Virus record (IMG/VR): IMGVR_UViG_3300032245_001746
Span: 255,858-319,857 of that record
DNA length: 64,000 bases
Reading direction: 5' to 3' (one strand)
Shown: positions 22,842 to 59,042 of the stretch, one piece after another
How the letters are laid out: each line of letters opens with the position of its first letter
How positions within the stretch are numbered: the first letter of the stretch is position 1
Position numbers and translations under genes: made by a program
The notes under the pieces: generated by a model
What the model was told of the DNA's origin: nothing
Seen by the model: the letters and a program-made list of their open reading frames with translations, nothing else
The model's database searches: none

Positions 22842-23252
22842 TTAAATGAAAGTTTTCCGAATATTTCCCGTTGATACTTTCCAAGTATAACCCGAATCCT
22901 GACTGTTTTGAGTATCTGAAAATAACTCAAGAATTATTTCGCTCTCATCACATGATTTAATTAACTCTGTTTCAGTTAATAAATCACGAATGGAATTCGT
23001 CTTATTCATTTCATCTTCATCATCCCAACCCATATTTTGCAGGGCTTGACCAAAAATACAACCCTTACAATCTGGTCCAGCCAATTTATTACCATCTATT
23101 GCTGGTCCATTCCAGGAACAAAGAACAACATGGTCAGAAGTGTTATAACGAAAATCAGGGTTTTCGTCTGCCAAACGAACAACTTCTTTTCTCAATTTCT
23201 CAAAAAAATCAAGTTGAGTACCATTACTCAGAATCACTTCTGAAATCTTCAT
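22842..23252 (-). CDS. Family A protein (ENPDF.YN..C...GP..CKGCIFGQALQNMGW..Q..QD.G..W)
   Basis: Paralog motif. Confidence 0.9.
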   Translation of the reverse strand: MKISEVILSNGTQLDFFEKLRKEVVRLADENPDFRYNTSDHVVLCSWNGPAIDGNKLAGPDCKGCIFGQALQNMGWDDEDEMNKTNSIRDLLTETELIKSCDESEIILELFSDTQNSQDSGYTWKVSTGNIRKTFI

Positions 23253-23469
23253 GTTGTATCCTTGTTATTAAGAGTTGGAGTGGAATCAATTATTCCACAC
23301 GTTAATGCTATTTATTCTAAAGTGCGACTCAAAAATGAATGAATAACTACATTTCCACTTTTTCGTGTTTCATAGCAATTCAAACATTCAAATAATCCAA
23401 CACTACATGTTCGAATTAACGTACCAGCCCTTCCATTTCCTGCCTTGCAGGTTTCACACTGATTAAATG

Positions 23470-23916
23470 TCATGGATTTTTACTTGTTTCTTGAAGCAAT
23501 TTTGAAATTCTTTCAATTGCTTTACCCCAGGATGCTCCATTATCCTGATCAACTTGTGTATCCCTAAAAGATACAATCCATTTGTGAGTTCGAGGAGTTA
23601 AAATATCAGCATATTCTGTACACAGTATTTCTGATATATTGTGTCCACAATTCATTTCGTTTTCATCATCCCAACCCATATTTTGCAGGGCTTGACCAAA
23701 AATACAACCCTTACAATCTGGTCCAGCTTGAATTGGTGTCACAGATAAAGATGTTTTCAAAGTTGCTGGACCATTGTAATGGCAAGAAGCAAGCCTTTCA
23801 GAAGTATTATACTGAAAATCAGGATTTTCCGTTCCCAATTTAACTACTTCTACTGCCACTTGCTTTACAAACTCAAGTTCAGAATTGAACTTGGCAATAA
23901 TTTCTTTTAAATTCAT
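23470..23916 (-). CDS. Family A protein
   Basis: Paralog motif. Confidence 0.9.
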   Translation of the reverse strand: MNLKEIIAKFNSELEFVKQVAVEVVKLGTENPDFQYNTSERLASCHYNGPATLKTSLSVTPIQAGPDCKGCIFGQALQNMGWDDENEMNCGHNISEILCTEYADILTPRTHKWIVSFRDTQVDQDNGASWGKAIERISKLLQETSKNP

Positions 23917-23971
23917 GATGTTATCCTTGTGGTTGATGTCACTCTATTGTACAATCAAACTTGATTTGATT

Positions 23972-24151
23972 TTACCACCATTCAGGTATTTCTTGATTTT
24001 TTTGATCTTCTTGATTTACATCAGAAATAACAAAAACTGGTGTTAGATTACCGTTTTGTTTCAATTTGATGTACATGCCTTTTACGATATATTTAATTTC
24101 ACCTTGATACAACAAAACTGTATCACCTGTCTGAAGAATAACGTTTGACAT
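23972..24151 (-). CDS. 59-aa hypothetical protein
   Basis: MSNVILQTGDTV...PEWW; below cutoff. Confidence 0.6.
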   Translation of the reverse strand: MSNVILQTGDTVLLYQGEIKYIVKGMYIKLKQNGNLTPVFVISDVNQEDQKNQEIPEWW

Positions 24152-24242
24152 GATTTTTATCTCAAATGGACTATAACAGAATTGAACTGTTTCTAATCAC
24201 TATTATCGTGATCGTGCTCCGTACACTAATAATCCAGAGTTT

Positions 24243-24497
24243 TCAACCAACCAAATGAATTACCAGCGAAATGATACTGGAAATTGCACAAACAATTGTT
24301 GAAATCCAAAGACCAATAGTAACATAAAACTTCTCGAAACCAATCGAATGCAATTTGTGAGAATTCAACTTATTCAAATCCATCTTGGATACATTTCCAA
24401 AAATAGATCGCACAGCAAAAACATGCCATGCCACAGTTGCAACAAACAAAACCACAGCAGAAACAGCAAAAATAACAAACAAATTCATTGCCGTCAT
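24243..24497 (-). CDS. Two-TM membrane protein
   Basis: Hydrophobic helices. Confidence 0.75.
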   Translation of the reverse strand: MTAMNLFVIFAVSAVVLFVATVAWHVFAVRSIFGNVSKMDLNKLNSHKLHSIGFEKFYVTIGLWISTIVCAISSIISLVIHLVG

Positions 24498-24859
24498 TTT
24501 CTCAACTCCAAAAAGAAATTCAAAACATCAATCGTAAAATAAATGGGTTCATTTTTTTGATCAACACCCGTTGTGTGACCATGAATCCATTTTTCAAATT
24601 GATCAACAAGACCAAATCCATCCAAATAATCAAACAGAAATTTCTGTGTATATCCCAACGCAGTGTTGGGAAGAATATGAATTTGTGATTTGATCCGCTC
24701 AATTGCAGTATCAACAACCAAATATTTCAATTCTTCAAGAGAAATGTTGCCATGAACTGGATGGGTATATGGCTTGTTGTCTCGAAAACAAGCCAATGCA
24801 GCCTGAACTTCTTTCAAAGCTGAAAAGGAAATTGAAGACAATTGTTCTTTTTTGCTCAT
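24494..24859 (-). CDS. Hypothetical protein
   Basis: GGAG RBS, MSKKEQ. Confidence 0.75.
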   Translation of the reverse strand: MSKKEQLSSISFSALKEVQAALACFRDNKPYTHPVHGNISLEELKYLVVDTAIERIKSQIHILPNTALGYTQKFLFDYLDGFGLVDQFEKWIHGHTTGVDQKNEPIYFTIDVLNFFLELRK

Positions 24860-24922
24860 CTTATAACTCCAGAAAAGATTGATATTAACACATTGTACAA
24901 TCAAACTTCATTGTATTAAAAC

Positions 24923-24953
24923 AAAAAAAGAACAGGAAAATTTCCTGTTCTTT
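24923..24953 (-). terminator. Intrinsic terminator
   Basis: AAAGAACAGGAAA/TTTCCTGTTCTTT. Confidence 0.85.
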
Positions 24954-25039
24954 AGCGATTTTTTAATAATTAGTGTTTTACTCGTCATTAACTAGAAAGT
25001 TAATTCTAATTAATACACCGCCAAACGCTCCACACTAAT
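24954..25039 (-). ncRNA. Candidate pseudoknotted RNA motif, copy 2
   Basis: See 8548-8652. Confidence 0.7.
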
Positions 25040-25285: not shown

Positions 25286-25320
25286 TTCTCACAATCCTTC
25301 ATTGTACAATCAAACTTCAT

Positions 25321-27031: not shown

Positions 27032-27439
27032 TCAAACTTCAAGAAGTGGTTTAATTGCTTCACCCCAAGAAGCACCAAAATCTTGTTTGCTTTGAATTTC
27101 CTGCAAAATATTAAGTTTTTGACGATCAATACCTCTGTTTTTCAGAACATAAATAATTGGACCAGCCATTTCCTCTTCAGAATTCCAACCCATATTCTGA
27201 AATGCCTGTCCAAAAATACAACCCTTGCATTCCGGTCCAATCTGGACTTTTTCAAATCCTAACTTGTCAGACCATGTTTCATTATATGATGGTCCAGAAT
27301 ATGAACAATAACGACCACCATTTTTAAGATTGTAAATAAAATCAGGATTTTCTGTTCCTAATTTAATTACTTCCGTCTTCAATACAGAAAGAAATTCATC
27401 TTCTGATGAATACTTTGCAATTAATTCACTCAGTTTCAT
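27032..27439 (-). CDS. Family A protein
   Basis: Paralog motif; ends LEV-TGA in the repeat. Confidence 0.9.
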   Translation of the reverse strand: MKLSELIAKYSSEDEFLSVLKTEVIKLGTENPDFIYNLKNGGRYCSYSGPSYNETWSDKLGFEKVQIGPECKGCIFGQAFQNMGWNSEEEMAGPIIYVLKNRGIDRQKLNILQEIQSKQDFGASWGEAIKPLLEV

Positions 27440-27482
27440 TTTATTATCCTTCAAAATTACTTGATATCATCGTATTGTACAA

Positions 27483-27893
27483 TCAAACTACTTTTCTAAA
27501 AAGTGGTTTAATTGCTTCACCCCAACTAAGCCCTTTATCTTGATCGTTTTGAATTTCCTGAAAAACATCAAGCTTTGTATAATGAAATTCATGATTTCTC
27601 AAAACTGTGGAAATTGAACCAATTAATTCCTCTTCAGGATTCCAACCCATATTTTGTAGGGCTTGACCGAAAATACAACCCTTACATTCCGGTCCAACTG
27701 TTTTCTTTATAGGATTTAACCAATCAGTATTGTTAGTACGATATGCTGGTCCATTGTAAGAACAAAGACCAAGATTTCCAGGATTGTAAATAAAATCAGG
27801 ATTTTCTGTTCCTAATTTAATTACTTCTGATTTCAATGCAGAAAGAAATTCATCTTGAGATGAATACTTTGCAATTATTTCACTCAGTTTCAT
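27483..27893 (-). CDS. Family A protein (tandem duplicate of 27032)
   Basis: Paralog motif; stop in the repeat. Confidence 0.9.
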   Translation of the reverse strand: MKLSEIIAKYSSQDEFLSALKSEVIKLGTENPDFIYNPGNLGLCSYNGPAYRTNNTDWLNPIKKTVGPECKGCIFGQALQNMGWNPEEELIGSISTVLRNHEFHYTKLDVFQEIQNDQDKGLSWGEAIKPLFRKVV

Positions 27894-30094: not shown

Positions 30095-30331
30095 CTAATC
30101 TTTTTTAAAGATTCCCTTAATAAACCCCTTCGCAAAATTCTTACTCTGCTTTCCAGTAAATTCACCCACATCCTCAGTTGTAGGTAAATTAATTCTTTTT
30201 GGTTCCTTATATGGCTTTTCAGAACTGGTGAGAATTAAACTGGTAAGCCACCAAGTTACAACTCCAAAAAGAATTAAACAAATTCCACTAAGAATGATTT
30301 TACAAATCTCTACAACTTCATTCTTTTTCAT
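30095..30331 (-). CDS. Membrane protein
   Basis: Start trimmed to MKKNEVV, coupled to the upstream stop. Confidence 0.7.
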   Translation of the reverse strand: MKKNEVVEICKIILSGICLILFGVVTWWLTSLILTSSEKPYKEPKRINLPTTEDVGEFTGKQSKNFAKGFIKGIFKKD

Positions 30332-30983
30332 AAACCAATTCCCCATTACACATATTAATTGTTTTTGTTTCCAATTCAGCCAAACAAATAAATTCACATG
30401 ATCGATATACAAATGATCTGGAAACGTGATGATGACCAAATACCCATAAATCCGGAACATGATCTCCTAACATCCACTGAAGCATATTTCTTGTAGATGT
30501 ATTGTCATATACCATTTCTCGCTTCAAAAAACGAAGAATTTCTGTAGGACAATCATGAGATATAACTACTTTCGGTTTCGTTTTTTGATATAAATCAAAT
30601 GCAGCAAATTGCTGTAATGTACTTAATTCCTCTTCCTGAAACCAATCTATTCGATCAATTAATCCAGGCTTATTAATCGAATATGCTCCACGTACATAAT
30701 AAATACCATCCTCTGTTACTCCATAATCACCTAGAGAATATGGAGAATTTGGGTAGATATTATAATCATCATGATTGCCACCAAGAATTTTGTGATTATT
30801 GGAATCAACATTTGATTCATCTAATCTTAACCAAGCATTGGTTTCAGTTTTAAATGAATAATGTCCAAAATCACCTAATTGAATTGTTTTCGCAGCTTTT
30901 GTTGGTGAAGAGGATTCGTAATTAACAATTGATCGCCAAGCATCAAAATTGTTATGAGAATCACCAATTAATGTGATATACAT
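30318..30983 (-). CDS. Calcineurin-like metallophosphoesterase
   Basis: GDSH, GDFG, GNHD, SHDCP, FGHHH motifs. Confidence 0.9.
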   Translation of the reverse strand: MYITLIGDSHNNFDAWRSIVNYESSSPTKAAKTIQLGDFGHYSFKTETNAWLRLDESNVDSNNHKILGGNHDDYNIYPNSPYSLGDYGVTEDGIYYVRGAYSINKPGLIDRIDWFQEEELSTLQQFAAFDLYQKTKPKVVISHDCPTEILRFLKREMVYDNTSTRNMLQWMLGDHVPDLWVFGHHHVSRSFVYRSCEFICLAELETKTINMCNGELVYEKE

Positions 30984-31042
30984 GTTTTTTCCTTTGGTAA
31001 CATCATCACATTGTACAATCAAACTTATATAAGTGTTTATGT

Positions 31043-32901: not shown

Positions 32902-33462
32902 TCAAACTTTGTGATCATTTTGAATAATTTCGTCATATTGTATTAAGCAACCATTTGAATCTTCAATAAAGATCAGGTTATTATTTTGATCATATTTGCG
33001 TTTTTCCCACCAACCATTTGAATCTTCAATAAAGATCAGATTATTATTTTGATCATAATCATATTTTACTGAATAATCATTTGAATTTTTATAAAGAATT
33101 AGATTATTATTTTGATCATATTTGTGTTTCATGTGAAACGAGTATGATCGTTTAATCGTCAGTTCGTTATTAACAATTCCAAATAGTTGATAATATTCTT
33201 CTTTTGGAATTTCTCTGATGACACGTAGTTTATTTGTTACAGATTTATCACAAGAATGGATACATTCGCCTAAATCTTCAATTTCGAGTAATTTGAAATT
33301 ATGTTGAATTGAATAATGGTTCAATACGTTAATTGGATTTTTACAATAGTGGAATCCATATTTGCACATAACTGGAGTTCTTGGTAATTCGTAGGTTTTT
33401 CCGATTTCGAATTTATGATTTAGACAAATGAAATCATAGGTTGCTTTGAATCCGGTTTTCAT
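32902..33462 (-). CDS. Family B protein with YD-like C-terminal repeats
   Basis: Motifs plus YDQNNNLI..EDSNG repeats; stop in the repeat. Confidence 0.9.
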   Translation of the reverse strand: MKTGFKATYDFICLNHKFEIGKTYELPRTPVMCKYGFHYCKNPINVLNHYSIQHNFKLLEIEDLGECIHSCDKSVTNKLRVIREIPKEEYYQLFGIVNNELTIKRSYSFHMKHKYDQNNNLILYKNSNDYSVKYDYDQNNNLIFIEDSNGWWEKRKYDQNNNLIFIEDSNGCLIQYDEIIQNDHKV

Positions 33463-33489: not shown

Positions 33490-34005
33490 CTATTTTTGAC
33501 CAAATTTGGCATCGATTAACTTATTATTTTGATCATATTCATATTTTGACCACAAGCCATTTGCGGATTCACAATAAGTTTCATTATTATTTTCATTAAA
33601 TTCGTATTTGGTCCAATCACCAAATGAATCTTCATAACGAATACGATTATTATTTTCATCAAATGTTTGTTTTGTCCAATAACCAGCTTCATAATTAGTT
33701 GTCAATTGATTGTTAATAATTCCAAATAGTTGATAATATTCTTCTTTTGGAATTTCTCTGATGACACGTAGTTTATTTGTTACAGATTTATCGTATTTGG
33801 TGATTGATATGCCAAGATCTTCAATTTCGAGCAAACGAAAAGTGTGTTTAATTGGATAATAACCAAGAACATCGATTGGATTTTTACAATAATGAAATCC
33901 ATATTTACAAGGAATTGGAGTTCCTGATAATTCGTAGGTTTTTCCGATTTCGAATTTATGATTTCTGCAAGAGAAATCGTAGGTTGCTTTGAGTCCAGTT
34001 TTCAT
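33490..34005 (-). CDS. Family B protein
   Basis: Paralog motifs and repeats. Confidence 0.9.
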   Translation of the reverse strand: MKTGLKATYDFSCRNHKFEIGKTYELSGTPIPCKYGFHYCKNPIDVLGYYPIKHTFRLLEIEDLGISITKYDKSVTNKLRVIREIPKEEYYQLFGIINNQLTTNYEAGYWTKQTFDENNNRIRYEDSFGDWTKYEFNENNNETYCESANGLWSKYEYDQNNKLIDAKFGQK

Positions 34006-34008: not shown

Positions 34009-34539
34009 TTACTTTCTATCTTTTTGTTTGTGATAAGAGAAATAACTAGTTACATTGTTATTTTGATCATATGTACGAATTGAATGATAACCAGATGAAT
34101 CTTCAATATATGTTAGATTATTTCTTTCATCATATTCATATTTTAGCCAAGCACCATATGAGTTTTCAAGATAAATCAGATTATTATTTTGATCATATTT
34201 GTGTTTTACCCAAATACCATTTAGTCCATTAATAGTCAGTTCATTATTAATCATACCAAATAATTCATAATATTCTTCTTTTGGAATTTCTCTTACAACA
34301 CGTAATTTATTTGTTGCAATTTTATCTTCATGATAGATTGATATGCCAATATCTTCAATTTCCAATAGATGGAAATCATTTTGAATTGGATAATATCCAA
34401 GAACATCAATTGGTTTGACGCAATAATGAAAACCATATTCGCAAGGAATTGGAGTTCCTGGTAATTCATAGGTTTTTCCGATTTCGAATTTGTGATCTCT
34501 GCAATAGAAATCGCGTGTAGCTTTGAATCCGATTTTCAT
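34009..34539 (-). CDS. Family B protein
   Basis: Paralog motifs and repeats. Confidence 0.9.
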   Translation of the reverse strand: MKIGFKATRDFYCRDHKFEIGKTYELPGTPIPCEYGFHYCVKPIDVLGYYPIQNDFHLLEIEDIGISIYHEDKIATNKLRVVREIPKEEYYELFGMINNELTINGLNGIWVKHKYDQNNNLIYLENSYGAWLKYEYDERNNLTYIEDSSGYHSIRTYDQNNNVTSYFSYHKQKDRK

Positions 34540-34928
34540 GATTTTTTCTTTACTGCATTTAGACAATGGTGGAAATTATTTGCATCACAGCGTTTATTTG
34601 GATTCGGATAATATTTTTCGAACCAATTTTCAATCATTTTATGATCAATGAGTTCTGATGTTGGATTCCAAAAACAAACGACACAACCGTCTAAAATGCA
34701 CCAATTAAGGGAGATACAAACTGATCTATCGTCATATTTTCCTACAGTTATTAGGAATCCATTAATTTGGTCCCAATTTTCAATTTCTGGATATTGGCAA
34801 TAACTGCTTTTTTTGCAAAATTTTGACCATAATTCATGGTAAGCAAAATCATCTGCTTCAACAAGAAATTGTGTAACAGCAATACGACTTTCTGGGTTAT
34901 TATATTTTTCAAAAAATTCGCGATTCAT
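34536..34928 (-). CDS. Hypothetical protein
   Basis: Coupled ORF. Confidence 0.75.
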   Translation of the reverse strand: MNREFFEKYNNPESRIAVTQFLVEADDFAYHELWSKFCKKSSYCQYPEIENWDQINGFLITVGKYDDRSVCISLNWCILDGCVVCFWNPTSELIDHKMIENWFEKYYPNPNKRCDANNFHHCLNAVKKKS

Positions 34929-35759: not shown

Positions 35760-36332
35760 CTATAGATCAGTAAAAACTATTCCATCAGGATTAATTTTCA
35801 AGTTTGCCAGATTTGATGATGGATGTTTGAAATAAAACATTTCCCACAAATTATTGTTAAACACTAATTTCATGATTAGTTCTTTATTTTCATTATAGAA
35901 ATATTCTTGGCATGGTTTTCCTTCGTAAAAAACTTTACGATTTAAGATATTTCCGTTTTCAAAATAAATTGAGATTTCCATTATCTCAATTTCATTTCGA
36001 ATAATAAGTGTTCGATTTGATGAATCATAAGAAAAATTTCTTCCCAATAGATTCATGATTTCATCAGGATTAGTTATTTCTCTTACAATTCGAATGTGAT
36101 TAGAAAAAGAATAAGATTGATAATGTTCAGTAACTTTGGATAAGTCTTCGATTTGTAACAATTTAAATGTTGGACAAATCGAGACATAATTAAACATATC
36201 TTTTGGATTACGAAAATAAAGTAATCCATTTTTAAATCGTTCAATTTTACCTGATACTTGATATTCTTTTCCAATTGACCATTTTGATTCAAAACATTCT
36301 TCATTTACTGTTGCTAAATAACCTTTTGACAT
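35760..36332 (-). CDS. Divergent family B protein
   Basis: GY...W.IGKEY..GLLYF.NP.D..LLQIEDL..IRIVREI. Confidence 0.75.
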   Translation of the reverse strand: MSKGYLATVNEECFESKWSIGKEYQVSGKIERFKNGLLYFRNPKDMFNYVSICPTFKLLQIEDLSKVTEHYQSYSFSNHIRIVREITNPDEIMNLLGRNFSYDSSNRTLIIRNEIEIMEISIYFENGNILNRKVFYEGKPCQEYFYNENKELIMKLVFNNNLWEMFYFKHPSSNLANLKINPDGIVFTDL

Positions 36333-41071: not shown

Positions 41072-41090
41072 TTTTAATATTCCTAAAAAG

Positions 41091-41163
41091 TGGTGCGGGT
41101 GGGAATTGAACCCACGACCAATAGATTAAAAGTCTAGTGCTCTACCAACTGAGCTACCACACC
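41091..41163 (-). tRNA. tRNA-Lys(UUU), second copy, no CCA
   Basis: GGTGTGG/CCGCACC acceptor, CTTTTAA loop. Confidence 0.95.
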
Positions 41164-44484: not shown

Positions 44485-44596
44485 ATTTGAATCCTTTTTG
44501 GATCATTGTACAATCAAACACTGACTATTATCTTGAGAACTTTGAACTTCTCTTAATAAGAAAAAATATTCATTGTCTTTATTGGAATCTTTATTT

Positions 44597-44926
44597 TTAA
44601 GAAACTTGTTGATTCCAAATATTTTTATTTTGTTTTTCTTTTTTAATTGAATTAAATTTTCGATAGTAATTTACCACTTCATCTCCGATACATACTGGAA
44701 TTATGTAGAAAATTAAAGTGAGTAAAAAAAATATAATAGCACAAACCAAAACAACAAGTACACAAGAAGTAACTAGGTAAAATCCAATAATGGGATATTC
44801 AATTAAATCTGGAATTGAATCAAACTCTGGCATAATTGCCGAGTAATAATTCATTAACATTCCTAGCAAACCAAGAAAAACAATGAACACTGTCAGAATA
44901 ATTGCTCCAATAGACCATGATTTCAT
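44597..44926 (-). CDS. Membrane protein
   Basis: TM helices. Confidence 0.75.
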   Translation of the reverse strand: MKSWSIGAIILTVFIVFLGLLGMLMNYYSAIMPEFDSIPDLIEYPIIGFYLVTSCVLVVLVCAIIFFLLTLIFYIIPVCIGDEVVNYYRKFNSIKKEKQNKNIWNQQVS

Positions 44927-45309
44927 TTTAATTTTCCTGACAAAAGTGTTTTAATTGCTTCACCCCAAGAATGACCTTCATCTTGTAGTTGCTGAACAAC
45001 CAAAAAATGACTATCATATGTAATGATGTTATCAGATATGAGGTTTGTAAATAATCGAACCAAATTCATTTCAATGAATAATTCGTATTTATCATCCCAA
45101 CCCATATTTTGGAGTGCTTGACCAAAGATACATCCTTTGCATCCTGGTCCTGTATCTGATCCGCGATTATAATAACACCGCCCAACACCACTGGTGTTAT
45201 ACACAAAATCAGGATTTTCCGTTCCTAATTTAATTACTTCTTGCTTTAGTGCATCAAAAAACGCATCAGCATTTTCGTTGTATTTTTTATAAACATCAAT
45301 TAATTTCAT
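44923..45309 (-). CDS. Family A protein
   Basis: Paralog motif. Confidence 0.9.
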   Translation of the reverse strand: MKLIDVYKKYNENADAFFDALKQEVIKLGTENPDFVYNTSGVGRCYYNRGSDTGPGCKGCIFGQALQNMGWDDKYELFIEMNLVRLFTNLISDNIITYDSHFLVVQQLQDEGHSWGEAIKTLLSGKLK

Positions 45310-45311: not shown

Positions 45312-45713
45312 TTAATTGCTCCATCTATTTAGTGGTTCAATTGCTTCTTGCCATGATTTTCCATGATCTTGATTAGTTTGAACTTCGCTCAAAATATTTA
45401 AGTATATACTGTTTTCTGTTTTTGAAACACAACCTTTTACGTTAGCATCTACGTCAAGAATGTAAGCGATAGAATCGCGACTTTCTAATTCATCTGAATC
45501 ATTCCAACCCATATTTTGGAGTGCTTGACCAAAAATGCATCCTTTACTTTCTTTGCCACCTTCTGGACCTCGATTATAATAGCACTGACCAATGCTATTT
45601 GAATTGTAAATAAAATCGGGATTTTCAACAGCAAGTGTTTGAACTTTTTCTTTAATCTTTGTAAGAAAAGAAAGATCAGATTCAAATTGACTACGAATTT
45701 CAGCAAGTTTCAT
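45312..45713 (-). CDS. Family A protein (first Cys of CKGC replaced, SKGC)
   Basis: Paralog motif. Confidence 0.9.
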   Translation of the reverse strand: MKLAEIRSQFESDLSFLTKIKEKVQTLAVENPDFIYNSNSIGQCYYNRGPEGGKESKGCIFGQALQNMGWNDSDELESRDSIAYILDVDANVKGCVSKTENSIYLNILSEVQTNQDHGKSWQEAIEPLNRWSN

Positions 45714-45765
45714 ATTTGTTTTTCCTTTATTGTATCATTGTGCAATCAAACTTAGATTTCTTACT

Positions 45766-46088: not shown

Positions 46089-46463
46089 CTAAGTGGTTTC
46101 GAATAATGGCTGAATTGCTTTTCCCCAAGTAAATCCACTATCTTGATAAGCTTGAACAGTAATAAACGCACTATCTTCAGACATAAAGTCTGATCTAATC
46201 AGACTATTAAACAAATCATCAACAGTTGATTTATTTGCCAATTCATCTGGATCATTCCACCCCATATTTTGGAGGGCTTGACCAATAATACATCCTTTAC
46301 ATTCTGGACCATTTTCTACACCAGAATTGTAATGACACATTTGTTGATTAGGATTGTAAACAAAATCGGGATTTTCCGCTCCCAATTTAACTAGTTGATA
46401 TCTGAATGAATCAAAAAATTCAACTTCATTTTTGTATTTTTTTACAACATCATTTAATTTCAT
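46089..46463 (-). CDS. Family A protein
   Basis: Paralog motif (CKGCIIGQAL). Confidence 0.9.
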   Translation of the reverse strand: MKLNDVVKKYKNEVEFFDSFRYQLVKLGAENPDFVYNPNQQMCHYNSGVENGPECKGCIIGQALQNMGWNDPDELANKSTVDDLFNSLIRSDFMSEDSAFITVQAYQDSGFTWGKAIQPLFETT

Positions 46464-46505
46464 GTTTAAATCCCATTTAGAGGTTGATGACTCATCATTG
46501 TACAA

Positions 46506-46664
46506 TCAAACTTGATTTAGGTGTTTAATTGCATTTCCCCAAGAATGACCTGAATCTTGACTATTTTGAACTCTTGACAAAGACTGAATTATTTCGCTAT
46601 AAATGCCATAATTGTGAAACATAGTTGTTACTCCAATTTGTTTTTTAAGTTCAATTAAATTCAT
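46506..46664 (-). pseudogene. Internally deleted family A copy (52 aa)
   Basis: MNLIELKKQ N-terminus and QNSQDSGHSWGNAI C-terminus, core missing; stop in the repeat. Confidence 0.65.
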
Positions 46665-46679: not shown

Positions 46680-47225
46680 TTAGACTGGCAATTCAATACC
46701 CAGAAATTTAATTATTTCTGATAATTCAATAACGGCAGATGATTTGAAATTATGTTTCAAAATCTGATTAATTCCCATATCATTTTTAAAATGAGCTAAT
46801 TGTAATGCAAATAATCCTTGTGTTTCAGATAAAAAGTGTGGTGAATCAACAGAATCAGAAATAATATTTCTGATTTCTTGTTCGGAACTTTCGATTCTAT
46901 ATGAGTGAATATTTCTGGAATTTCCATCCGTTAAAGATACTAGATGTTCAAATCTATGTTTTTGACAATGAAAATTAATTTCTTCAATTAATTCTCTTTG
47001 CAATGCATCAACGAGATTTTCGCCAGGATCAACATTTCCTCCTGGAAATCCCAAACAACCATCCCATCTTGTTAACATTAAAACCAGAGGAATATTAATT
47101 CCTCTTTGTTCTTTTTCAACATGAGTATAACTAACATATGGTTTTGCGTTTGGTGTGTAAATTACACCAAAAACCATTTGTCTCATATTTGGTTGAATTT
47201 CACATGGTTCTATTTTAGAGTACAT
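46680..47225 (-). CDS. Nudix hydrolase, NUDT16-like
   Basis: MLTRWDGCLGFPGGNVDPGE..ALQRELIEE Nudix box. Confidence 0.85.
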   Translation of the reverse strand: MYSKIEPCEIQPNMRQMVFGVIYTPNAKPYVSYTHVEKEQRGINIPLVLMLTRWDGCLGFPGGNVDPGENLVDALQRELIEEINFHCQKHRFEHLVSLTDGNSRNIHSYRIESSEQEIRNIISDSVDSPHFLSETQGLFALQLAHFKNDMGINQILKHNFKSSAVIELSEIIKFLGIELPV

Positions 47226-49191: not shown

Positions 49192-49650
49192 TCAAACACT
49201 TTCTAATAGATTTTCTACGCAATTACTCCAGGAGTTTCCAGAATCTTGTAAATTTTGTGTTTCTCGAAAAGAAGATAATAAAACATCAATTTGGTCATCA
49301 ACAAATTCTAGTTGAAAAACTCCAGCAAAATTTCTTAAAATAGTCTTAATATTGTAAGTCACATTCATTTGTTGTGAATCAGTCCAGCCCATATTTTGGA
49401 GTGCTTGACCAAAAATGCAGCCTTTACAATCTGGACCTACAACTTCTTGAATTTTATTTTCTTTATCAACTGAAACAACTGGACCATTATATTTACATTT
49501 TGTTCTTATTTTTAACGCTTTATTTTGTTCATAGTTTGGATTATAAACAAAATTTGGATTTTCACTTGCTAGTTTCAAAACTTGTTTTTTAAGTTCAATT
49601 AAAAAATCTTGATGTGATTCGAATTTATTAACAATTTGTTTTAAGTTCAT
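49192..49650 (-). CDS. Family A protein
   Basis: Paralog motif. Confidence 0.9.
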   Translation of the reverse strand: MNLKQIVNKFESHQDFLIELKKQVLKLASENPNFVYNPNYEQNKALKIRTKCKYNGPVVSVDKENKIQEVVGPDCKGCIFGQALQNMGWTDSQQMNVTYNIKTILRNFAGVFQLEFVDDQIDVLLSSFRETQNLQDSGNSWSNCVENLLESV

Positions 49651-50042
49651 GAATGTTCCTCTAATTTTCCAATACAAAATCTTACAAATGACTGTTCTGT
49701 TTCATAGTCTAGAACCAATCCAGTAGTTTTATCAAATATCTTACGATATTCTGGCGTTCCGTAGAAATCATCATAATATAGATTGTGAGAAGTTATTAGG
49801 TTCAGTTCAATTAGTGGCAATAAATGTTTTTCAAAAGAATATTCTTCTCCAACAAATTTTTCGAATTTTTCTTTTTCAATGTGAAATGGACGAACATATT
49901 CCACGAAACATTTTAGAGAAATTTTGTCTTCACCACTGATAAAATCATTTGCGGCTTTTTCAATTTCTCCATCAGTAGTTTCTGATTCATAATAGAAACA
50001 GTTTCTTACCATCCAATTAAATAATTCATCTGGATTAACCAT
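49647..50042 (-). CDS. Acidic hypothetical protein
   Basis: Coupled ORF. Confidence 0.75.
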   Translation of the reverse strand: MVNPDELFNWMVRNCFYYESETTDGEIEKAANDFISGEDKISLKCFVEYVRPFHIEKEKFEKFVGEEYSFEKHLLPLIELNLITSHNLYYDDFYGTPEYRKIFDKTTGLVLDYETEQSFVRFCIGKLEEHS

Positions 50043-50445
50043 TGTTTACTCTCAAAAGTTTAATGCAATCACCCCAAGATGGTCCAACATCTTGTGTTCT
50101 TTGAACTAAAAGAAGTTGTTCAGGCACTTTTAATTCTTCGCTAACACAAGAATATAACAAATCTTCTATATCTACTCTTAACTTCATTTCTTTTTCATCA
50201 TCCCACCCCATATTTTGTAGGGCTTGACCAAAAATACAACCCTTACATTCTGGACCTGTGATTTCATATTCTTGAGTTGAATTATTATAAACCTTTGCAG
50301 GACCGTTATAAAAGCATACTGATGCTGCTGAATTTGTATATTTAAAATCAGGTTTTTCTTTTCCAAGTTTAATGACTTCTTGAATTAAAGCTTTTACAAA
50401 ATCATCACAAGATGGAAATTGACTGGCTATTTGTTGCAAATTCAT
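50035..50445 (-). CDS. Family A protein
   Basis: Paralog motif. Confidence 0.9.
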   Translation of the reverse strand: MNLQQIASQFPSCDDFVKALIQEVIKLGKEKPDFKYTNSAASVCFYNGPAKVYNNSTQEYEITGPECKGCIFGQALQNMGWDDEKEMKLRVDIEDLLYSCVSEELKVPEQLLLVQRTQDVGPSWGDCIKLLRVNNG

Positions 50446-50475: not shown

Positions 50476-50549
50476 TGGGACTTCTCGGACTTGAACCGAG
50501 AACCAACGAATTATGAGTTCGCTGCTCTAACCTATTGAGCTAAAGTCCC
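50476..50549 (-). tRNA. tRNA with CAU anticodon, probably Ile2 (lysidine) type, no CCA
   Basis: GGTTAGAGCAG..CTCATAA pattern like bacterial tRNA-Ile2; GGGACTT/AAGTCCC acceptor. Confidence 0.85.
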
Positions 50550-50559: not shown

Positions 50560-51117
50560 TCATCTTACAGACATTACTGTTCCGTCGCTGTTTAAATATT
50601 CTGTTGTTTTGCTTGTAAGACAACCACTCGAACAATATTCCATTGTGGTGCGAAATCCAGAAGAACATTCTTCATAAGTCATGTCGTTATTTTCATTAAA
50701 CTTGCGTTTAACCCATCTTCCTGTTGAAGATTCAAAGTAAATTCTATTTCTTTGTTTATCAAATTGATGTTTTTCCCAGTGACCATCTGGGTCTGTAATT
50801 TTAACTTCATTTTCAAAAATTTCAATTTGTTTATTAAATATTTTTTCGCATTCTTCTATTGGAACTTCTCGAATAACTCTCAATTTGTTTGTTACTGACT
50901 TATTCCATCTTGAATAAGATTCACCTAGATCTTCAATTTCCAATAACTTGAAGTCAGGCATAATTGGATAATAAGTTAAAACATTAATTGCATTAGTGCA
51001 ATAATGAAATCCATAATGGCACATAATTGGTATGCCTGGTAATTCATAAGTTTCTCCAATTTCGAATTTATGATTAATACAAGTAAAATTGTAAGTGCCT
51101 TTATATCCAATAATCAT
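50560..51117 (-). CDS. Family B protein
   Basis: Paralog motifs and repeats. Confidence 0.9.
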   Translation of the reverse strand: MIIGYKGTYNFTCINHKFEIGETYELPGIPIMCHYGFHYCTNAINVLTYYPIMPDFKLLEIEDLGESYSRWNKSVTNKLRVIREVPIEECEKIFNKQIEIFENEVKITDPDGHWEKHQFDKQRNRIYFESSTGRWVKRKFNENNDMTYEECSSGFRTTMEYCSSGCLTSKTTEYLNSDGTVMSVR

Positions 51118-51132: not shown

Positions 51133-51504
51133 TTACATCATTGTACATTGTTTTTGTGTTCCTTTAAAGAACACAAGTGATTTTAAGTTGTTGAAAGGAA
51201 ACTTATCATCTGCTTTCATTTTTATTTCATTTATTTCAACATGACCGTCATTCAATGTTCTTCTTCTTTCTGAATTAGAAGAAAACATTCCTTTTACACA
51301 AAGATTTTCGATCATCCACTCTAACACTGAATCTTCTTTAATGGAAAGATCATCTTTCAAAAATACTGGCTTTTCTCCAGTATTTTTGAAATGTTCAATT
51401 TGTTCTTGACTCCATGTTTTGGAGTTTTTCAAAATTTCTCCAACTTTTTTGCCAGAGAAACCGTGTTTCATTACATCTTGTGCTGAAAGCATTTTACACC
51501 ACAT
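51133..51504 (-). CDS. Hypothetical protein with possible CCA-enzyme-tail-like and S4-like segments
   Basis: LSAQDVMKHGFSGKKVGEIL and SNSERRRTLNDGHVEIN. Confidence 0.5.
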   Translation of the reverse strand: MWCKMLSAQDVMKHGFSGKKVGEILKNSKTWSQEQIEHFKNTGEKPVFLKDDLSIKEDSVLEWMIENLCVKGMFSSNSERRRTLNDGHVEINEIKMKADDKFPFNNLKSLVFFKGTQKQCTMM

Positions 51505-54760: not shown

Positions 54761-55543
54761 TTAAATGAGAAGTCCATGATCATTATAATCTGTATCATCT
54801 TTTGATGATGATTTAATCAAACGATTGTTTTCGTCATATATGTTCTTTTGCCAATAACCGTCTGAACTCTTATAATAGGTCACATTTCCAAACATGTTAT
54901 ATTCAACATAAAATCCAATAAGATTCAACAATTCATTTTGATCAGTAATTTCTCTTACAATACGAATTTTATTTGTTACTGTTTTATCATATTCTGTTTC
55001 TGAATCGCCCAAATCTTCAATTTCAAGCAATTTAAAGTTATATTGATGAGGGTAATATTTCAACACATCTTTAGCATTTTTGCAATAATGAAAGCCATAA
55101 AAACATGGAAGTGGCTTTCCTGATAATTCATAAGTTTCCCCGATTTTAAACTCATGTCCACGACAAACATAGTTATATGTACCTTTATATCCTTTTTTTT
55201 CTTCTTTATAATTTGTCACTTGATTATCTAGCAATTTTTGCATTTTATTTGTTGTTTCGATTGCATCTTGTTTTGCTAAATTCATAGCTTTTTCATCGGT
55301 TCCATAAAACACTTCTGTATTTGACATAGAACCAGATGAAAGTTTAAATCTCACACAACCCATAAAACCTTTGCCGTGAAATGCACGAACATGTGCAATA
55401 AAAGCATAATAATATTCTGTTTCGTAAAAAACAGAACCTTTGTGATGATAAACCACTGTGTTAATTGTTGGATGTTCATTCATTTTTTCAGGATGAAGAG
55501 TGTTTTGCCACAAATTTTCATTATCATAGAAGTTGTCAGACAT
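54761..55543 (-). CDS. Family B domain fused to an unrelated N-terminal domain
   Basis: KGYKGTYNYVC motif starts at about residue 117. Confidence 0.85.
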   Translation of the reverse strand: MSDNFYDNENLWQNTLHPEKMNEHPTINTVVYHHKGSVFYETEYYYAFIAHVRAFHGKGFMGCVRFKLSSGSMSNTEVFYGTDEKAMNLAKQDAIETTNKMQKLLDNQVTNYKEEKKGYKGTYNYVCRGHEFKIGETYELSGKPLPCFYGFHYCKNAKDVLKYYPHQYNFKLLEIEDLGDSETEYDKTVTNKIRIVREITDQNELLNLIGFYVEYNMFGNVTYYKSSDGYWQKNIYDENNRLIKSSSKDDTDYNDHGLLI

Positions 55544-56912: not shown

Positions 56913-57362
56913 TCAACATGAATGAACAGAGGTTTTTGATTTGTCATAATCATTTTGGTTTTTTCTTTCCTTTAAAGGAAAAATTGCTTCACCCCAAGAT
57001 TGACCTGCATCTTGATTCATTTGAACTGGATTTAAATAGTAAAAATTAAAAGAAGTTTCTCCAAAATCAGCAAGCAATGCCGAAATTGTTTTATCGCTTT
57101 TCATTTCATAATCATCATCCCAACCCATATTTTGTAAAGCCTGACCAAAAATGCATCCTTTGCATTCTGGACCAAGAATTATATTTACATTTGATTTGGA
57201 TTTTGCTGATCCATTATAATAACATTGAGCATCTAGTTTTCGATAGGCTGTATTGTAAATAAAATCGGGATTTTCTGTTCCCAACTTAATTACTTCTGCA
57301 TTTAATGAATCAGCAAATTCATTAACAGATGAATGTTTCCCAATAACTTCTTTTAAATTCAT
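56913..57362 (-). CDS. Family A protein
   Basis: Paralog motif. Confidence 0.9.
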   Translation of the reverse strand: MNLKEVIGKHSSVNEFADSLNAEVIKLGTENPDFIYNTAYRKLDAQCYYNGSAKSKSNVNIILGPECKGCIFGQALQNMGWDDDYEMKSDKTISALLADFGETSFNFYYLNPVQMNQDAGQSWGEAIFPLKERKNQNDYDKSKTSVHSC

Positions 57363-57388
57363 TTTTTTCTCCAATTAATATTATGTAA

Positions 57389-57730
57389 TTACCAATTATA
57401 TTTTTGAAATGAATCAACTTTGTATGCATCTGCATCGAATTCAATTATAACGGCAGATACTGAATTTGCGTATTCAATAATTGGTTTAAACCAATCAGGA
57501 GTGTCTTCTGTCATATCTGTTACCCAAACGATCCAGCCATATTCAGATTCAACAACGCGATATGATCCAAATTTTGGTGCCGGTCCTGGAACGTGGACTG
57601 TTGATAATTGCAACATATTATTCACAATACGTTCTTGGTGTCCACAATTGTTGCAATATCCGTTAGCATCACAACTCATTAAATGAGTTCCAAACATCGT
57701 ACATTGTTCAATATTTGAATGGTTAGGCAT
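57389..57730 (-). CDS. Hypothetical protein with N-terminal Cys/His cluster
   Basis: HLMSCD..GYCNNCGH. Confidence 0.7.
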   Translation of the reverse strand: MPNHSNIEQCTMFGTHLMSCDANGYCNNCGHQERIVNNMLQLSTVHVPGPAPKFGSYRVVESEYGWIVWVTDMTEDTPDWFKPIIEYANSVSAVIIEFDADAYKVDSFQKYNW

Positions 57731-57796
57731 TTGAGTTCCTTAAATTAAACAAATAAATTTTAATTTTTTTGATTCTTATGTAAGTTCATTGTACAA

Positions 57797-58405
57797 TCAA
57801 ACTTTTGAATATGTTTCACGTTTTGTTATTTCATATCCATTTTCATCATATGTTGATTCAGAAAAATATCCACTTGAATTTTTGTGTGTCAACCGACATC
57901 CATTGTGATCATATGTTGATTCAGAAAAATATCCATTTGAATCCTTATAGTTAAGAAGAGAACCATTTTCATTGTGTGTTTGTTCATACGAAAATCCTCT
58001 GGAATGTTTGTATGTCGACACATTGCCATTTTTGTCATATGTATATTCATACCAATATCCATAAGAATCTTTACATCTAAACAATTTACCATTTTCATTA
58101 TAAATTCTATGACATCCAATTAATTGAATTAATTCATCTGGATCATTAATTTCTCGAATAATTCTTATCTTGTCTGTACAAGATTTATCATTTTCTTCAA
58201 TTGTGAATAAACCTAAATCTTCAATTTCCAATAATTTGAATCGCCTTGTATATGAATAATGTTTCAATGTATTTCTAGCATTTTTGCAATAATGAAATCC
58301 ACGTGAACACATAATTGGCTTTTCTGACAATTCATAAGTTTGACCAATTTCAAATTTAAAATCGCGACAAACAAAATCGTAGGTAGCTTTATATCCAATT
58401 TTCAT
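57797..58405 (-). CDS. Family B protein with 24-aa tandem repeats
   Basis: Paralog motifs; SSGYFSESTYD repeats 72 bp apart; stop in the repeat. Confidence 0.9.
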   Translation of the reverse strand: MKIGYKATYDFVCRDFKFEIGQTYELSEKPIMCSRGFHYCKNARNTLKHYSYTRRFKLLEIEDLGLFTIEENDKSCTDKIRIIREINDPDELIQLIGCHRIYNENGKLFRCKDSYGYWYEYTYDKNGNVSTYKHSRGFSYEQTHNENGSLLNYKDSNGYFSESTYDHNGCRLTHKNSSGYFSESTYDENGYEITKRETYSKV

Positions 58406-58444
58406 TTTATTATTTTCTATTTTAAATGTAAAAAGTTATTTAAC

Positions 58445-58633
58445 TTATGATGCTAAAAAATAGCAAATTGCAAAATAAACAGCCCAGATGAAACCAATGG
58501 GTATAAGCCAAAAAAACCTATAAATTGATCCAAAATCATAATGACTTGTTCTATGATAAGGTCTAAACAACATAATTAAACAGAACAATGTTGCAGCGAT
58601 TGGAATAAAGATTGCATTAATTGTAATTGACAT
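58445..58633 (-). CDS. Two-TM membrane protein
   Basis: Hydrophobic. Confidence 0.75.
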   Translation of the reverse strand: MSITINAIFIPIAATLFCLIMLFRPYHRTSHYDFGSIYRFFWLIPIGFIWAVYFAICYFLAS

Positions 58634-58643
58634 AAATTTTTTT

Positions 58644-59042
58644 CTAAGAAATTAGTTCACTAATAGATTTTTTCCAAGATCCACCTAAATCCTGGCAAGC
58701 CTGAGTTCGTCTGAACTTTTCAAGCAAATCCTGATATTTTATTTCATAATTAAGAATTAAAGTATTTAAATACGTGTCAATTCTAAGTGACATTCCTAAT
58801 TCATCATAATTATTGCATCCCATATTTTGTAGGGCTTGACCGAAAATACAACCATTACATTTTGGACCTACAATAGATCCTATTTTGTTTTTTGCTGGAC
58901 CGTAGTATGTACAAAATCCTTCTCTATTAGGATTATAAACAAAATCAGGATTGCTTGTTCCTAATTTAATTACTTCTTGCTTTAAAGCTTCAAGAAATTC
59001 AAGTTTTGAATTAAACTTATTGCAAATATCAATTAACTTCAT
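58644..59042 (-). CDS. Family A protein
   Basis: Paralog motif (CNGCIFGQAL); start trimmed to MKLID. Confidence 0.9.
   Translation of the reverse strand: MKLIDICNKFNSKLEFLEALKQEVIKLGTSNPDFVYNPNREGFCTYYGPAKNKIGSIVGPKCNGCIFGQALQNMGCNNYDELGMSLRIDTYLNTLILNYEIKYQDLLEKFRRTQACQDLGGSWKKSISELIS

What the first reader, a model, noticed from the sequence alone, without database searches (positions are those of the whole stretch)
22842..59042. Eleven-member expansion of an uncharacterised Cys-motif protein family (family A)
Seen: 22842, 23470, 27032, 27483, 44923, 45312, 46089, 49192, 50035, 56913 and 58644 share L(G/A)xENPDFxYN..C.(Y/W)..(variable loop)..CKGCI(F/I)GQA(L/F)QNMG(W/C)..Q..QDxGxxW. The loop between the first Cys and CKGC varies from about 5 to about 22 aa. 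Inference: invariant core plus hypervariable loop in many early-expressed copies suggests diversifying anti-defence or host-binding proteins. Three Cys may bind zinc.
Basis: partly seen in the sequence, partly recalled or inferred. Interest (0 to 1): 0.65.

Follow-up and report, generated by a model that had tools for sequence, protein, structure and literature searches.

The report
Expanded unknown-fold phage protein family
A roughly 530-kb uncultured phage carries at least twelve working copies and two wrecks of a small, phage-only protein of unknown function and apparently unsolved fold. The copies are old, kept by purifying selection, and differ mainly in one ordered surface hairpin.

Summary
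All eleven ORFs exist on the minus strand and match one profile at E 1e-51 to 1e-60. I also found two decayed copies in the window and a twelfth intact copy about 2.2 kb past its end.

The family is PHROG 572, function unknown. It has no Pfam, NCBIfam or PADLOC match. A profile search finds 4,233 cluster representatives, nearly all standalone proteins of 110-160 aa. Cultured-phage matches were all actinophages, often with 2-4 copies.

Two AlphaFold models (pLDDT 94 and 95) have no PDB counterpart (best Z 3.5-4.0). The "variable loop" is modelled as an ordered beta-hairpin.

Across 204 relatives Tyr37, Tyr47, Cys60, Gly63, Gln106 and Asp110 are effectively invariant, and Cys45 is kept in 99%. 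The first Cys of CKGC is kept in only 74% and is Ser in copy 45312, so an obligate three-Cys zinc site is unlikely.

Orthologue dN/dS is 0.34 overall, against 0.32 for neighbours. It is 0.40 in the hairpin and 0.04 in the core. That is purifying selection, not diversifying selection.

Best reading: old, subfunctionalised accessory paralogues with a constant Cys-centred polar site and copy-specific surfaces. Their biochemical function remains unknown.

The parts
22842..23252 (-). Family copy 1, 136 aa. Its C-terminal half is unrelated to that of its positional orthologue in L001.
   Evidence: E 2.6e-53. Searches show the half-gene replacement.
23470..23916 (-). Family copy 2, 148 aa. The promoter-like 15-mer lies at 23946-23960.
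   Evidence: E 7.7e-60. PHROG 572 at E 4.9e-14. Orthologue in L001 is 86% identical with dN/dS 0.25. Motif.
27032..27439 (-). Family copy 3, 135 aa, second gene of a tandem pair. The 15-mer lies at 27474-27488.
27483..27893 (-). Family copy 4, 136 aa (P0001), first gene of the tandem pair. This is the copy that was modelled; its loop folds as a beta-hairpin.
   Evidence: AlphaFold model with pLDDT 95.4 and strands at residues 51-54 and 62-65.
44527..44616 (-). Remnant of the C-terminal end of a lost copy (approximate limits). It has no start of its own.
   Evidence: Six-frame profile hit at E 0.012. Aligns at 72% nucleotide identity to the 3' part of the intact copy P0025 in L009.
44923..45309 (-). 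Family copy 5, 128 aa (P0011), with the shortest loop. It starts 2 nt after the stop of copy 6.
   Evidence: AlphaFold model with pLDDT 94.4. Absent from related contigs L008 and L010.
45312..45713 (-). Family copy 6, 133 aa. It reads SKGC in place of CKGC. The 15-mer (one mismatch) lies at 45737-45751.
   Evidence: The L005 orthologue also has SKGC, with dN/dS 0.26.
46089..46463 (-). Family copy 7, 124 aa. The 15-mer lies at 46497-46511.
   Evidence: Orthologues in L008 (93% identical) and L005 (62% identical).
46506..46664 (-). Decayed copy: a 52-aa ORF with an in-frame internal deletion that removes the whole conserved middle.
   Evidence: (E 1.7e-9). A full-length copy lies at the same position in L005 (9527-9967).
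49192..49650 (-). Family copy 8, 152 aa, with long insertions both before and after the first Cys.
   Evidence: L008 orthologue is 86% identical with dN/dS 0.26. Absent from L005.
50035..50445 (-). Family copy 9, 136 aa. A tRNA-Met gene lies directly upstream at 50476-50549.
   Evidence: Orthologues in L008 and L005 keep the hairpin sequence.
56913..57362 (-). Family copy 10, 149 aa.
   Evidence: E 3.1e-57.
58644..59042 (-). Family copy 11, 132 aa, the most divergent: CNGC, MGC, and pI 8.2 against 4.4-5.4 for the others. It follows a terminator-like hairpin at 59129-59162.

Best explanation
**What is shown.**
- These genes are a lineage-specific expansion of a very widespread family. The phage holds at least 12 intact copies and 2 decayed ones.
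- The family is apparently phage-restricted and single-domain, catalogued as PHROG 572 with no known function.
- It has a compact, mostly helical fold that is confidently predicted and has no detectable solved relative.

**What is inferred (mechanism).**
- Every member keeps one constant polar site.
  - It is built around Cys60, which sits at the N-terminal cap of helix 3 in the motif GCI(F/I)GQAL.
  - Cys45 and Tyr47 (the C-x-Y motif), Tyr37 (of PDFxY) and the C-terminal Q-x-x-Q-D-x-G-x-x-W motif complete it.
  - This site probably does the common job: binding a small ligand or metal, or thiol chemistry.
- An ordered beta-hairpin of 11-25 residues lies between Cys45 and the CxxC motif. This hairpin and the helix 4-5 region differ between copies but are kept between orthologues.
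- The paralogues are therefore old and subfunctionalised. Each probably directs the same core activity to a different partner or substrate during host takeover or counter-defence.
- New combinations arise by gain, loss and exchange of gene halves around the conserved core, not by rapid point substitution in the loop.
For: **Family membership and spread.**
- PHROG 572 at E 1e-10 to 1e-14 over nearly the whole profile.
- 147 word-search relatives and 4,233 representatives at E<=1e-3.
- Nearly all of the best 150 are standalone proteins of 110-160 aa. About eight are tandem two-domain fusions. The ten longest listed hits, which include those fusions, showed no Pfam domain.

**Fold.**
- Two models with pLDDT 94.4 and 95.4, both pTM 0.89.
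- Foldseek against PDB: best E 8 and 1.2.
- Exhaustive VIA-align against 48,161 chains: best Z 3.5 and 4.0.
- Only uncharacterised viral models match.

**Constant site.** In 204 relatives Tyr37, Tyr47, Cys60, Gly63, Gln106 and Asp110 are effectively 100% conserved. Cys45 is 99%, and Gln109 and Trp115 are 98%. The core has dN/dS 0.04 with dS 0.66.

**Variable but ordered and maintained surfaces.** The hairpin is modelled at pLDDT 87-95. Its dN/dS is 0.40, and the mid region scores 0.56, both with confidence intervals below 1. Orthologous loops are nearly identical.

**Old paralogues.** They sit on deep branches, each with orthologues in related phages.

**Recurrent independent expansion.**
- A 7-copy tandem array in unrelated contig L013 forms its own clade.
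- Rhodococcus phage Peregrin has 3-4 copies and mycobacteriophage Porky has 2.

**Turnover and mosaics.**

**Accessory context.** A 58-kb block of about 150 small minus-strand genes carries its own 15-mer motif, together with NADAR, Nudix, metallophosphoesterase and nine DUF7666 genes.
Against: - No biochemical function is shown for any member. Every annotated cultured-phage homologue listed is labelled 'hypothetical protein'.
- I could not read model coordinates, so the claim that the invariant residues form one site is inferred from sequence order and secondary structure. It was not measured.
- Strict conservation of a few polar residues could be structural rather than functional.
- The anti-defence or takeover role rests on neighbourhood alone. 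No RNA data exist and PADLOC gives nothing.
- Two of the mosaic proteins come from contigs shorter than 1 kb and could be assembly chimeras. Only the locus 22842 against L001 case sits on a long contig.
- dN/dS comes from pooled pairwise Nei-Gojobori counts. A few positively selected sites would be missed.
Confidence: 0.45

Rival explanations
1. Arms-race effectors. The copies are anti-defence or host-binding proteins whose loop is under continuing diversifying selection.
For: - Loop length and sequence differ strongly between paralogues.
- Copy content differs between phages that are 76-92% identical.
- Decayed copies and mosaics exist.
- The genes lie beside NADAR and Nudix genes.
Against: - Hairpin dN/dS is 0.40 (CI 0.25-0.65).
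- The family as a whole scores 0.34, the same as its neighbours at 0.32.
- Orthologous hairpins are conserved even at 76% protein identity.
- The paralogues predate the split of the related phages.
- The family also occurs in actinophages, whose hosts are very different, so the core target is unlikely to be host-specific.
Confidence: 0.2
2. Structural zinc module. Cys45, Cys57 and Cys60 plus a fourth ligand hold a zinc ion, as in treble-clef fingers where a CxxC motif sits at a helix start after a hairpin. On this reading the protein is a binding scaffold, not a catalyst.
For: - The CxxC motif lies exactly at the N-terminus of helix 3 and follows a beta-hairpin.
- Three Cys are present in 10 of the 11 window copies.
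- 133 of 204 relatives have three Cys in this segment and 36 have four or five.
- Asp110 is invariant and could be the fourth ligand.
Against: - Cys57 is absent from 26% of relatives, and 52 of those 54 still keep both Cys45 and Cys60.
- Copy 45312 and its orthologue have Ser at this position yet evolve under purifying selection.
- No conserved His or fourth Cys exists.
- No zinc-finger family or fold is matched.
Confidence: 0.2
3. Replication accessory factor. The protein would act as a partner or loader of a DnaB-type helicase.
For: - In the cluster E mycobacteriophages that were matched (85 Mycobacterium phage records), nearly all listed hits lie directly upstream of the DnaB-like helicase gene. 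In Porky the member (gp79) overlaps that gene's start by 8 nt.
- The size and helical nature of the protein resemble small phage helicase loaders. This comparison comes from my own knowledge and was not tested.
Against: - This is one phage lineage, so it counts as one observation.
- Porky's second copy (gp72) and Peregrin's copies are not next to a helicase gene.
- No DnaB_C domain is found in the 320 kb held.
- Twelve paralogues and 7-copy arrays do not fit a single loader.
Confidence: 0.08
4. Cysteine hydrolase or thiol oxidoreductase. Cys60 at the helix start would be a nucleophile, as in papain-like NlpC/P60 enzymes or in CxxC oxidoreductases.
For: - Cys60 is invariant at a helix N-cap, with invariant Gln106 and Asp110.
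- Three weak, independent structural echoes of NlpC/P60 appear: Foldseek 4jxb_B at E 9.6, VIA 8ev5_A at Z 2.8, and an Atlas NLPC_P60 cluster at TM 0.39.
Against: - All three scores are at noise level.
- There is no conserved His.
- There is no beta-sheet core, only a hairpin.
- Pfam shows no NLPC_P60 or thioredoxin match even at E<=1.
- In CxxC redox enzymes the first Cys is the one that is kept; here the second is kept.
Confidence: 0.07

Closest known systems
PHROG 572 (phage orthologous group, function unknown)
   Same: All four window copies that were tested match it over nearly its whole length (profile positions 4-125 of 127) at E 1e-10 to 1e-14.
   Different: PHROG 572 carries no function. 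The window copies are longer than its 127-position profile in the hairpin, and they occur as 12 or more paralogues instead of one to a few.
Actinophage homologues: mycobacteriophage Porky gp79 and gp72, Rhodococcus phage Peregrin gp24, gp20 and gp19, plus Gordonia and Streptomyces phage proteins
   Same: They share the motifs PD.xY, C-x-Y, (G/C)CI(V/F)G(Q/H)AL and Q-x-x-Q-D-x-x-x-W. They score profile E 1e-8 to 1e-22. BFVD structural matches have TM 0.58-0.61. They are often present in 2-4 copies.
   Different: They are about 28-30% identical, have short loops, and come from high-GC hosts. The cluster E copy is coupled to a DnaB-like helicase gene. Every one I saw annotated is labelled hypothetical.
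Treble-clef or zinc-ribbon style small Cys proteins
   Same: A CxxC motif sits at the first turn of a helix and is preceded by a beta-hairpin, with a further upstream Cys.
   Different: One of the would-be ligands is dispensable in 26% of the family. No fourth Cys or His is conserved, and no fold or profile match exists.
Small phage proteins that soak up defence signalling molecules (Tad1, Tad2, Acb2)
   Same: This is a functional analogy only, drawn from my own knowledge. Those are also small, soluble, acidic phage proteins, found across unrelated phages, with a strictly conserved ligand pocket.
   Different: No sequence or fold similarity was found. The homo-oligomer test gave no answer. Ligand binding was not tested.
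DUF7666 (PF24703), the second expanded family in the same block
   Same: It has nine copies interleaved with family A on the same strand and in the same 58-kb block. It is also of unknown function and also varies in copy number between related phages.
   Different: Its sequences are unrelated, its proteins are longer (170-260 aa), and it is absent from the L013 array of family A.

Membership tests
PHROG 572 | Significant match to the family profile over most of its length | tested here: met
   E 4.9e-14, 2.2e-10, 4.4e-10 and 2.1e-14 for four copies, covering profile positions 4-125 of 127.
PHROG 572 and its wider family | The conserved motif set: PDFxY, C-x-Y, GCIxGQAL and QxxQDxGxxW | tested here: met
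   Present in all 11 copies. The key residues are 98-100% conserved in 204 relatives.
Zinc finger (treble-clef type) | Four conserved metal ligands (Cys or His) | tested here: not met
   Only Cys45 (99%) and Cys60 (100%) are conserved. Cys57 is at 74%. No conserved His or fourth Cys exists, and 34 of 204 relatives have just two Cys in this segment.
Zinc finger (treble-clef type) | Bound zinc ion | not testable with these tools
   This needs metal analysis or a solved structure.
NlpC/P60 papain-like peptidases | Cys-His-polar catalytic triad and a match to PF00877 | tested here: not met
   No conserved His. No Pfam hit at E<=1. Structural scores are at noise level.
Thioredoxin-like CxxC oxidoreductases | Thioredoxin alpha/beta fold with the first Cys of CxxC conserved | tested here: not met
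   The model is helical apart from one hairpin. The second Cys is the invariant one and the first is lost in 26% of relatives.
Known anti-phage defence proteins (PADLOC) | Profile match | tested here: not met
   No family at E<=1 for six members.
Any family with a solved structure | Sequence-profile or fold match to a PDB chain | tested here: not met
   Best sequence E-values are 0.13-0.19, to designed proteins. Best Foldseek E-values are 1.2 and 8. Best VIA Z-scores are 3.5 and 4.0.

The most novel reading that the evidence does not exclude
The family is a new protein fold with a Cys-centred active or ligand-binding site. It would be one of the larger uncharacterised effector families of tailed phages, with thousands of clusters. 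Its repeated independent expansion into arrays of 7-12 paralogues would reflect one conserved activity being aimed at many different host or defence targets through a swappable hairpin and a swappable C-terminal half.
Probability: 0.3. Interest if true: 0.75.

Novelty: new member of a known kind. Interest (0 to 1): 0.5.

Why it matters
- The family is large: 4,233 representatives at 50% identity in a 1.84-billion-protein library.
- It is found almost only in phages. It spans 47-kb actinophages to a 530-kb phage, and it has no function, no Pfam entry and no solved relative.
- Its conserved residues define clean mutants (Cys60, Asp110, Gln106). Culturable homologues exist in Mycobacterium smegmatis phages, so the function is directly testable.
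- The expansion gives a natural experiment. Twelve old paralogues share one core but have different, maintained surfaces. Related genomes show gain, loss and half-gene exchange.
- If the core turns out to bind a signalling molecule or a metal, or to carry out thiol chemistry, this would add a new class of phage accessory protein and a new fold.

Tried and rejected
- **Family and fold searches.** Pfam, NCBIfam and PADLOC scans gave nothing meaningful. PDB sequence-profile searches found only designed proteins at E>0.1. Foldseek PDB and exhaustive VIA-align on two models gave no match.
- **Atlas 'named' feature search.** No usable hit. The only named structural row is NLPC_P60 at TM 0.39, which I rejected as noise.
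- **Homodimer test with complex prediction.** This was prompted by the tandem two-domain fusions. The verdict was 'no answer', score 0.00. It is not evidence either way.
- **Domain fusions as a route to function.** The ten longest listed hits carry no Pfam domain, and most are just two copies of this domain.
- **Gene conversion as the cause of core conservation.** Rejected, because core dS is 0.66, the highest of any region.
- **Sigma-70 promoter scan of 44-60 kb.** At chance: 97 found against 96.6 expected.
- **RNA evidence.** No RNA run holds the phage.
- **Literature.** Searches for PHROG 572, cluster E phages and overexpression screens found nothing on this family.
- **Nucleotide search of cultured phages.** Only a 64-nt match of no consequence.

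Full report
**1. Observation**

A profile built from them scores each copy at E 3.5e-51 to 3e-60 in a six-frame scan of the window. Apart from the two remnants described below, nothing else scores better than E 2.4. The copies are 40-51% identical to each other.

With ATG starts the genes encode 124-152 aa, and most have an AAGGA/GGAG-like ribosome-binding site 6-9 nt upstream. The exceptions are SKGC in copy 45312, CNGC and MGC in copy 58644, ENPNF in copy 49192 and EKPDFKYT in copy 50035. The spacing between the first Cys and the CxxC motif is 11-25 residues.

**2. More copies than eleven**

- ORF 46506-46664(-) is a 52-aa remnant. It keeps the first few residues and the C-terminal QxxQDxGxSW but has lost the whole middle by an in-frame deletion. 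A full-length copy sits at the same place in related contig L005.
- A second remnant lies at about 44527-44616(-). It aligns to the 3' end of a copy that is intact in L009, and L005 also has a full copy after the orthologous gene.
- The window is the last 64 kb of a 319,857-b IMG/VR record that CheckV rates 63% complete.
- The same phage, 99.99% identical over 7.8 kb, lies on a 530,789-b scaffold. That scaffold carries one more intact copy (P0028) about 2.2 kb beyond the window end.
- The other 256 kb of the record hold no copy.

The phage therefore has at least 12 intact and 2 decayed copies, all within about 45 kb.

**3. What the family is**

Pfam, NCBIfam and PADLOC give nothing. PHROGs places four tested copies in PHROG 572, 'unknown function', at E 1e-10 to 1e-14 over nearly the full profile.

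A word-indexed search with the 11-copy profile found 147 relatives. None had a Pfam domain or an informative name. An exhaustive HMMER search of 1.84 billion representatives with a 94-sequence profile found 4,233 proteins at E<=1e-3 and 1,232 at E<=1e-10. Nearly all of the best 150 are standalone proteins of 110-160 aa. About eight are tandem fusions of two copies of the domain. The ten longest listed hits, which include those fusions, have no Pfam domain.

Among 50,697 cultured-phage records, the tblastn queries matched only actinophages: Mycobacterium, Gordonia and Rhodococcus (177 records with one query). Every homologue I saw annotated is 'hypothetical protein'. BFVD adds Streptomyces phage proteins.

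In the cluster E mycobacteriophage Porky, one member (gp79) overlaps the start of the DnaB-like helicase gene by 8 nt, and a second member is gp72. Rhodococcus phage Peregrin has at least three members (gp24, gp20, gp19).

**4. Structure**

- AlphaFold2 with a 94-row alignment gave pLDDT 94.4 and pTM 0.89 for the short-loop copy 44923.
- With 150 rows it gave pLDDT 95.4 and pTM 0.89 for the long-loop copy 27483.
- The fold has two N-terminal helices, then a long ordered coil that carries PDFxY and C-x-Y, then five to six further helices.
- Helix 3 begins exactly at the second Cys of CxxC.
- In the long-loop copy the variable segment forms a beta-hairpin (strands 51-54 and 62-65) at pLDDT 87-95.
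- Foldseek against the PDB gave best E 8 and 1.2.
- Exhaustive VIA-align against 48,161 chains gave best Z 3.5 and 4.0. That is well under the Z 7-8 the tool calls typical even for unmatched models.
- Only uncharacterised viral models match, at TM 0.6-0.8.

I could not read coordinates, so residue proximities are not measured.

**5. Conservation**

| Residue(s) | Conservation in 204 single-domain relatives |
|---|---|
| Tyr37, Tyr47, Cys60, Gly63, Gln106, Asp110 | effectively 100% |
| Cys45 | 99% |
| Gln109, Trp115, Gly70 | 98% |
| Pro33, Gly59 | 96% |
| Gln64 | 93% |
| Cys57 (first Cys of CKGC) | 74% (Ser in 11%) |

Of the 54 relatives that lack Cys57, 52 keep both Cys45 and Cys60. Thirty-four relatives have only two Cys in the whole segment. 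Window copy 45312 and its orthologue both have Ser at position 57.

An obligate three-Cys zinc site is therefore not a family feature. A conserved Cys pair, together with Tyr, Gln, Asp and Trp, is.

**6. Selection**

Contigs from other samples (L001-L010) are syntenic with the window at 76-92% nucleotide identity. For reciprocal-best orthologue pairs, family A genes have dN/dS 0.25-0.54, like their neighbours.

| Region (eight clean pairs pooled) | dN/dS | 95% CI |
|---|---|---|
| N-terminal helices | 0.31 | 0.19-0.51 |
| PDFxY to C-x-Y | 0.24 | 0.11-0.44 |
| Hairpin loop | 0.40 | 0.25-0.65 |
| Core (dS 0.66) | 0.04 | 0.01-0.11 |
| Helix 4-5 region | 0.56 | 0.39-0.81 |
| C-terminal part | 0.41 | 0.25-0.69 |
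| Family A overall | 0.34 | not computed |
| 7,821 neighbouring codons | 0.32 | 0.30-0.35 |

The loop is relaxed relative to the core but is under purifying selection. The core is conserved at the protein level, not by gene conversion.

A maximum-likelihood tree puts each window paralogue on a deep branch with its own orthologues, mostly at 99-100% support. The 7-copy array of unrelated contig L013 forms a separate clade, which means an independent expansion.

**7. Turnover**

Related phages differ in which copies they hold.

- L008 and L010 lack copies 44923 and 45312.
- L005 lacks copy 49192 but has intact copies where the window has the 46506 remnant, and another full copy after the orthologue of 44597-44926.
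- L009 has the copy whose C-terminal remnant survives near 44527-44616.

Halves are also exchanged. P0015 joins an N-part 89% identical to the 27483 type with a C-part 100% identical to that of P0023. P0018 joins a 23470-type N-part with a 56913-type C-part. These two come from contigs under 1 kb and may be assembly chimeras.

One case lies on a 31-kb contig. At locus 22842 the positional orthologue in L001 shares the N-terminal 237 nt at 81% identity, and its protein has an unrelated C-terminal half.

**8. Context**

- The genes lie in a block of about 150 small minus-strand genes.
- The 15-mer GTTTGATTGTACAAT occurs 69 times exactly in the 320-kb record, always on the minus strand and only inside the window. 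Allowing two mismatches gives 86 matches on both strands, against fewer than 1 expected.
- The motif contains the palindrome ATTGTACAAT and ends in a -10-like TACAAT.
- It lies 24-35 nt upstream of the ATG of copies 23470, 27032, 45312 and 46089, and about 10 nt upstream of a tRNA gene.
- Ordinary sigma-70 promoter matches are at chance.
- Recognisable neighbours are a metallophosphoesterase (30318-31022), a Nudt16-like Nudix protein (46680-47225), a NADAR protein (62155-62718, by orthology) and nine DUF7666 genes.
- The phage and its relatives occur in wastewater and river metagenomes. No RNA run holds it.

**9. Interpretation**

*Shown.* This is a real, old, multi-copy expansion of a widespread phage-specific family. 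It has a confidently modelled fold with no solved relative, a strongly constrained core, paralogue-specific but maintained surfaces, and gene-level turnover.

*Inferred.* The invariant polar residues form one functional site (ligand or metal binding, or thiol chemistry), and the hairpin and helix 4-5 surfaces give each copy its own partner. A takeover or counter-defence role rests only on neighbourhood.

*Rivals.*
- Continuing diversifying selection is not supported by dN/dS.
- An obligate zinc finger is weakened by the dispensable Cys57.
- A helicase accessory role rests on one phage lineage only, and no DnaB_C domain is in the 320 kb held.
- A papain-like or redox enzyme has only noise-level fold echoes and no conserved His.

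The homodimer prediction gave no verdict and is not used.

**10. Novelty**

The genes are new members of an already catalogued but uncharacterised family (PHROG 572). Three things are new here:
- the size of the expansion;
- the evidence that its paralogues are old and selectively maintained;
- the finding that the fold has no solved counterpart.

Noticed in passing
window 5516-61808, minus strand (densest 5516-29579): The 15-mer GTTTGATTGTACAAT occurs 69 times exactly in the 320-kb record, always on the minus strand and only inside this window. It holds the palindrome ATTGTACAAT and ends in a -10-like TACAAT. It recurs about every 300 nt, and where checked it lies upstream of small genes and of at least one tRNA. 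It is probably a phage-specific promoter or operator for one temporal class.
   Followed up: partly
window 344-769(+), 32902-33462, 33490-34005, 34009-34566, 35760-36332, 39487-39999, 50560-51117, 54761-55543, 57797-58405 (all -): A second expanded family of nine copies, DUF7666 (PF24703), is interleaved with family A. It is confined to the window part of the record and varies in copy number among related contigs.
   Followed up: partly
window 8696-8769, 11405-11480, 16064-16149, 24166-24236, 41090-41163, 50476-50549, 61710-61783 (all -): Seven tRNA genes are scattered among the small genes: three tRNA-Lys(ttt), two tRNA-Leu(taa), one Arg(tct) and one Met(cat). The duplicated tRNAs read A/T-ending codons, which fits the 30% GC genome.
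   Followed up: no
window 30318-31022(-), 46680-47225(-), 62155-62718(-), 57389-57730(-): The few recognisable neighbours are a calcineurin-like metallophosphoesterase, a Nudt16-like Nudix hydrolase, a NADAR-domain protein (by orthology to L005 4488-5045) and a DUF5983 protein (by orthology to L005 14488-14826). Such enzymes are sometimes linked to nucleotide or ADP-ribose signalling and counter-defence.
   Followed up: partly
window end (64000) = end of the 319,857-b record: The IMG/VR record is a fragment. The same phage (99.99% identical) is on a 530,789-b metagenome scaffold that continues past the window and carries another family A copy.
   Followed up: partly
window 1-6000 against 6000-20000: There is a composition step. 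GC is 27-29% in the first 6 kb, where GC skew falls to -0.44. GC is 34-41% in 6-20 kb, where the 15-mer motif and tRNAs are densest. It is about 30% from roughly 30 kb onward.
   Followed up: no
window 59129-59162: A 14-15-bp perfect hairpin followed by a T-rich tract can be read on both strands. It lies between gene 59077-59376 and family copy 58644, and is probably a bidirectional terminator. A similar hairpin lies at 51355-51391.
   Followed up: no
L013:9902-13195 (ENA ERZ27315821 contig): An unrelated phage contig carries seven family members in an almost uninterrupted tandem array. Several overlap their neighbours by 4-17 nt. They form their own clade in the tree.
   Followed up: partly
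window 27032-27893 against L001:5388-6303: In the tandem pair, the downstream window copy (27032) is the closest relative of the upstream L001 copy, and the reverse also holds. So the order of the pair is swapped, or the two genes have exchanged sequence, between related phages.
   Followed up: no
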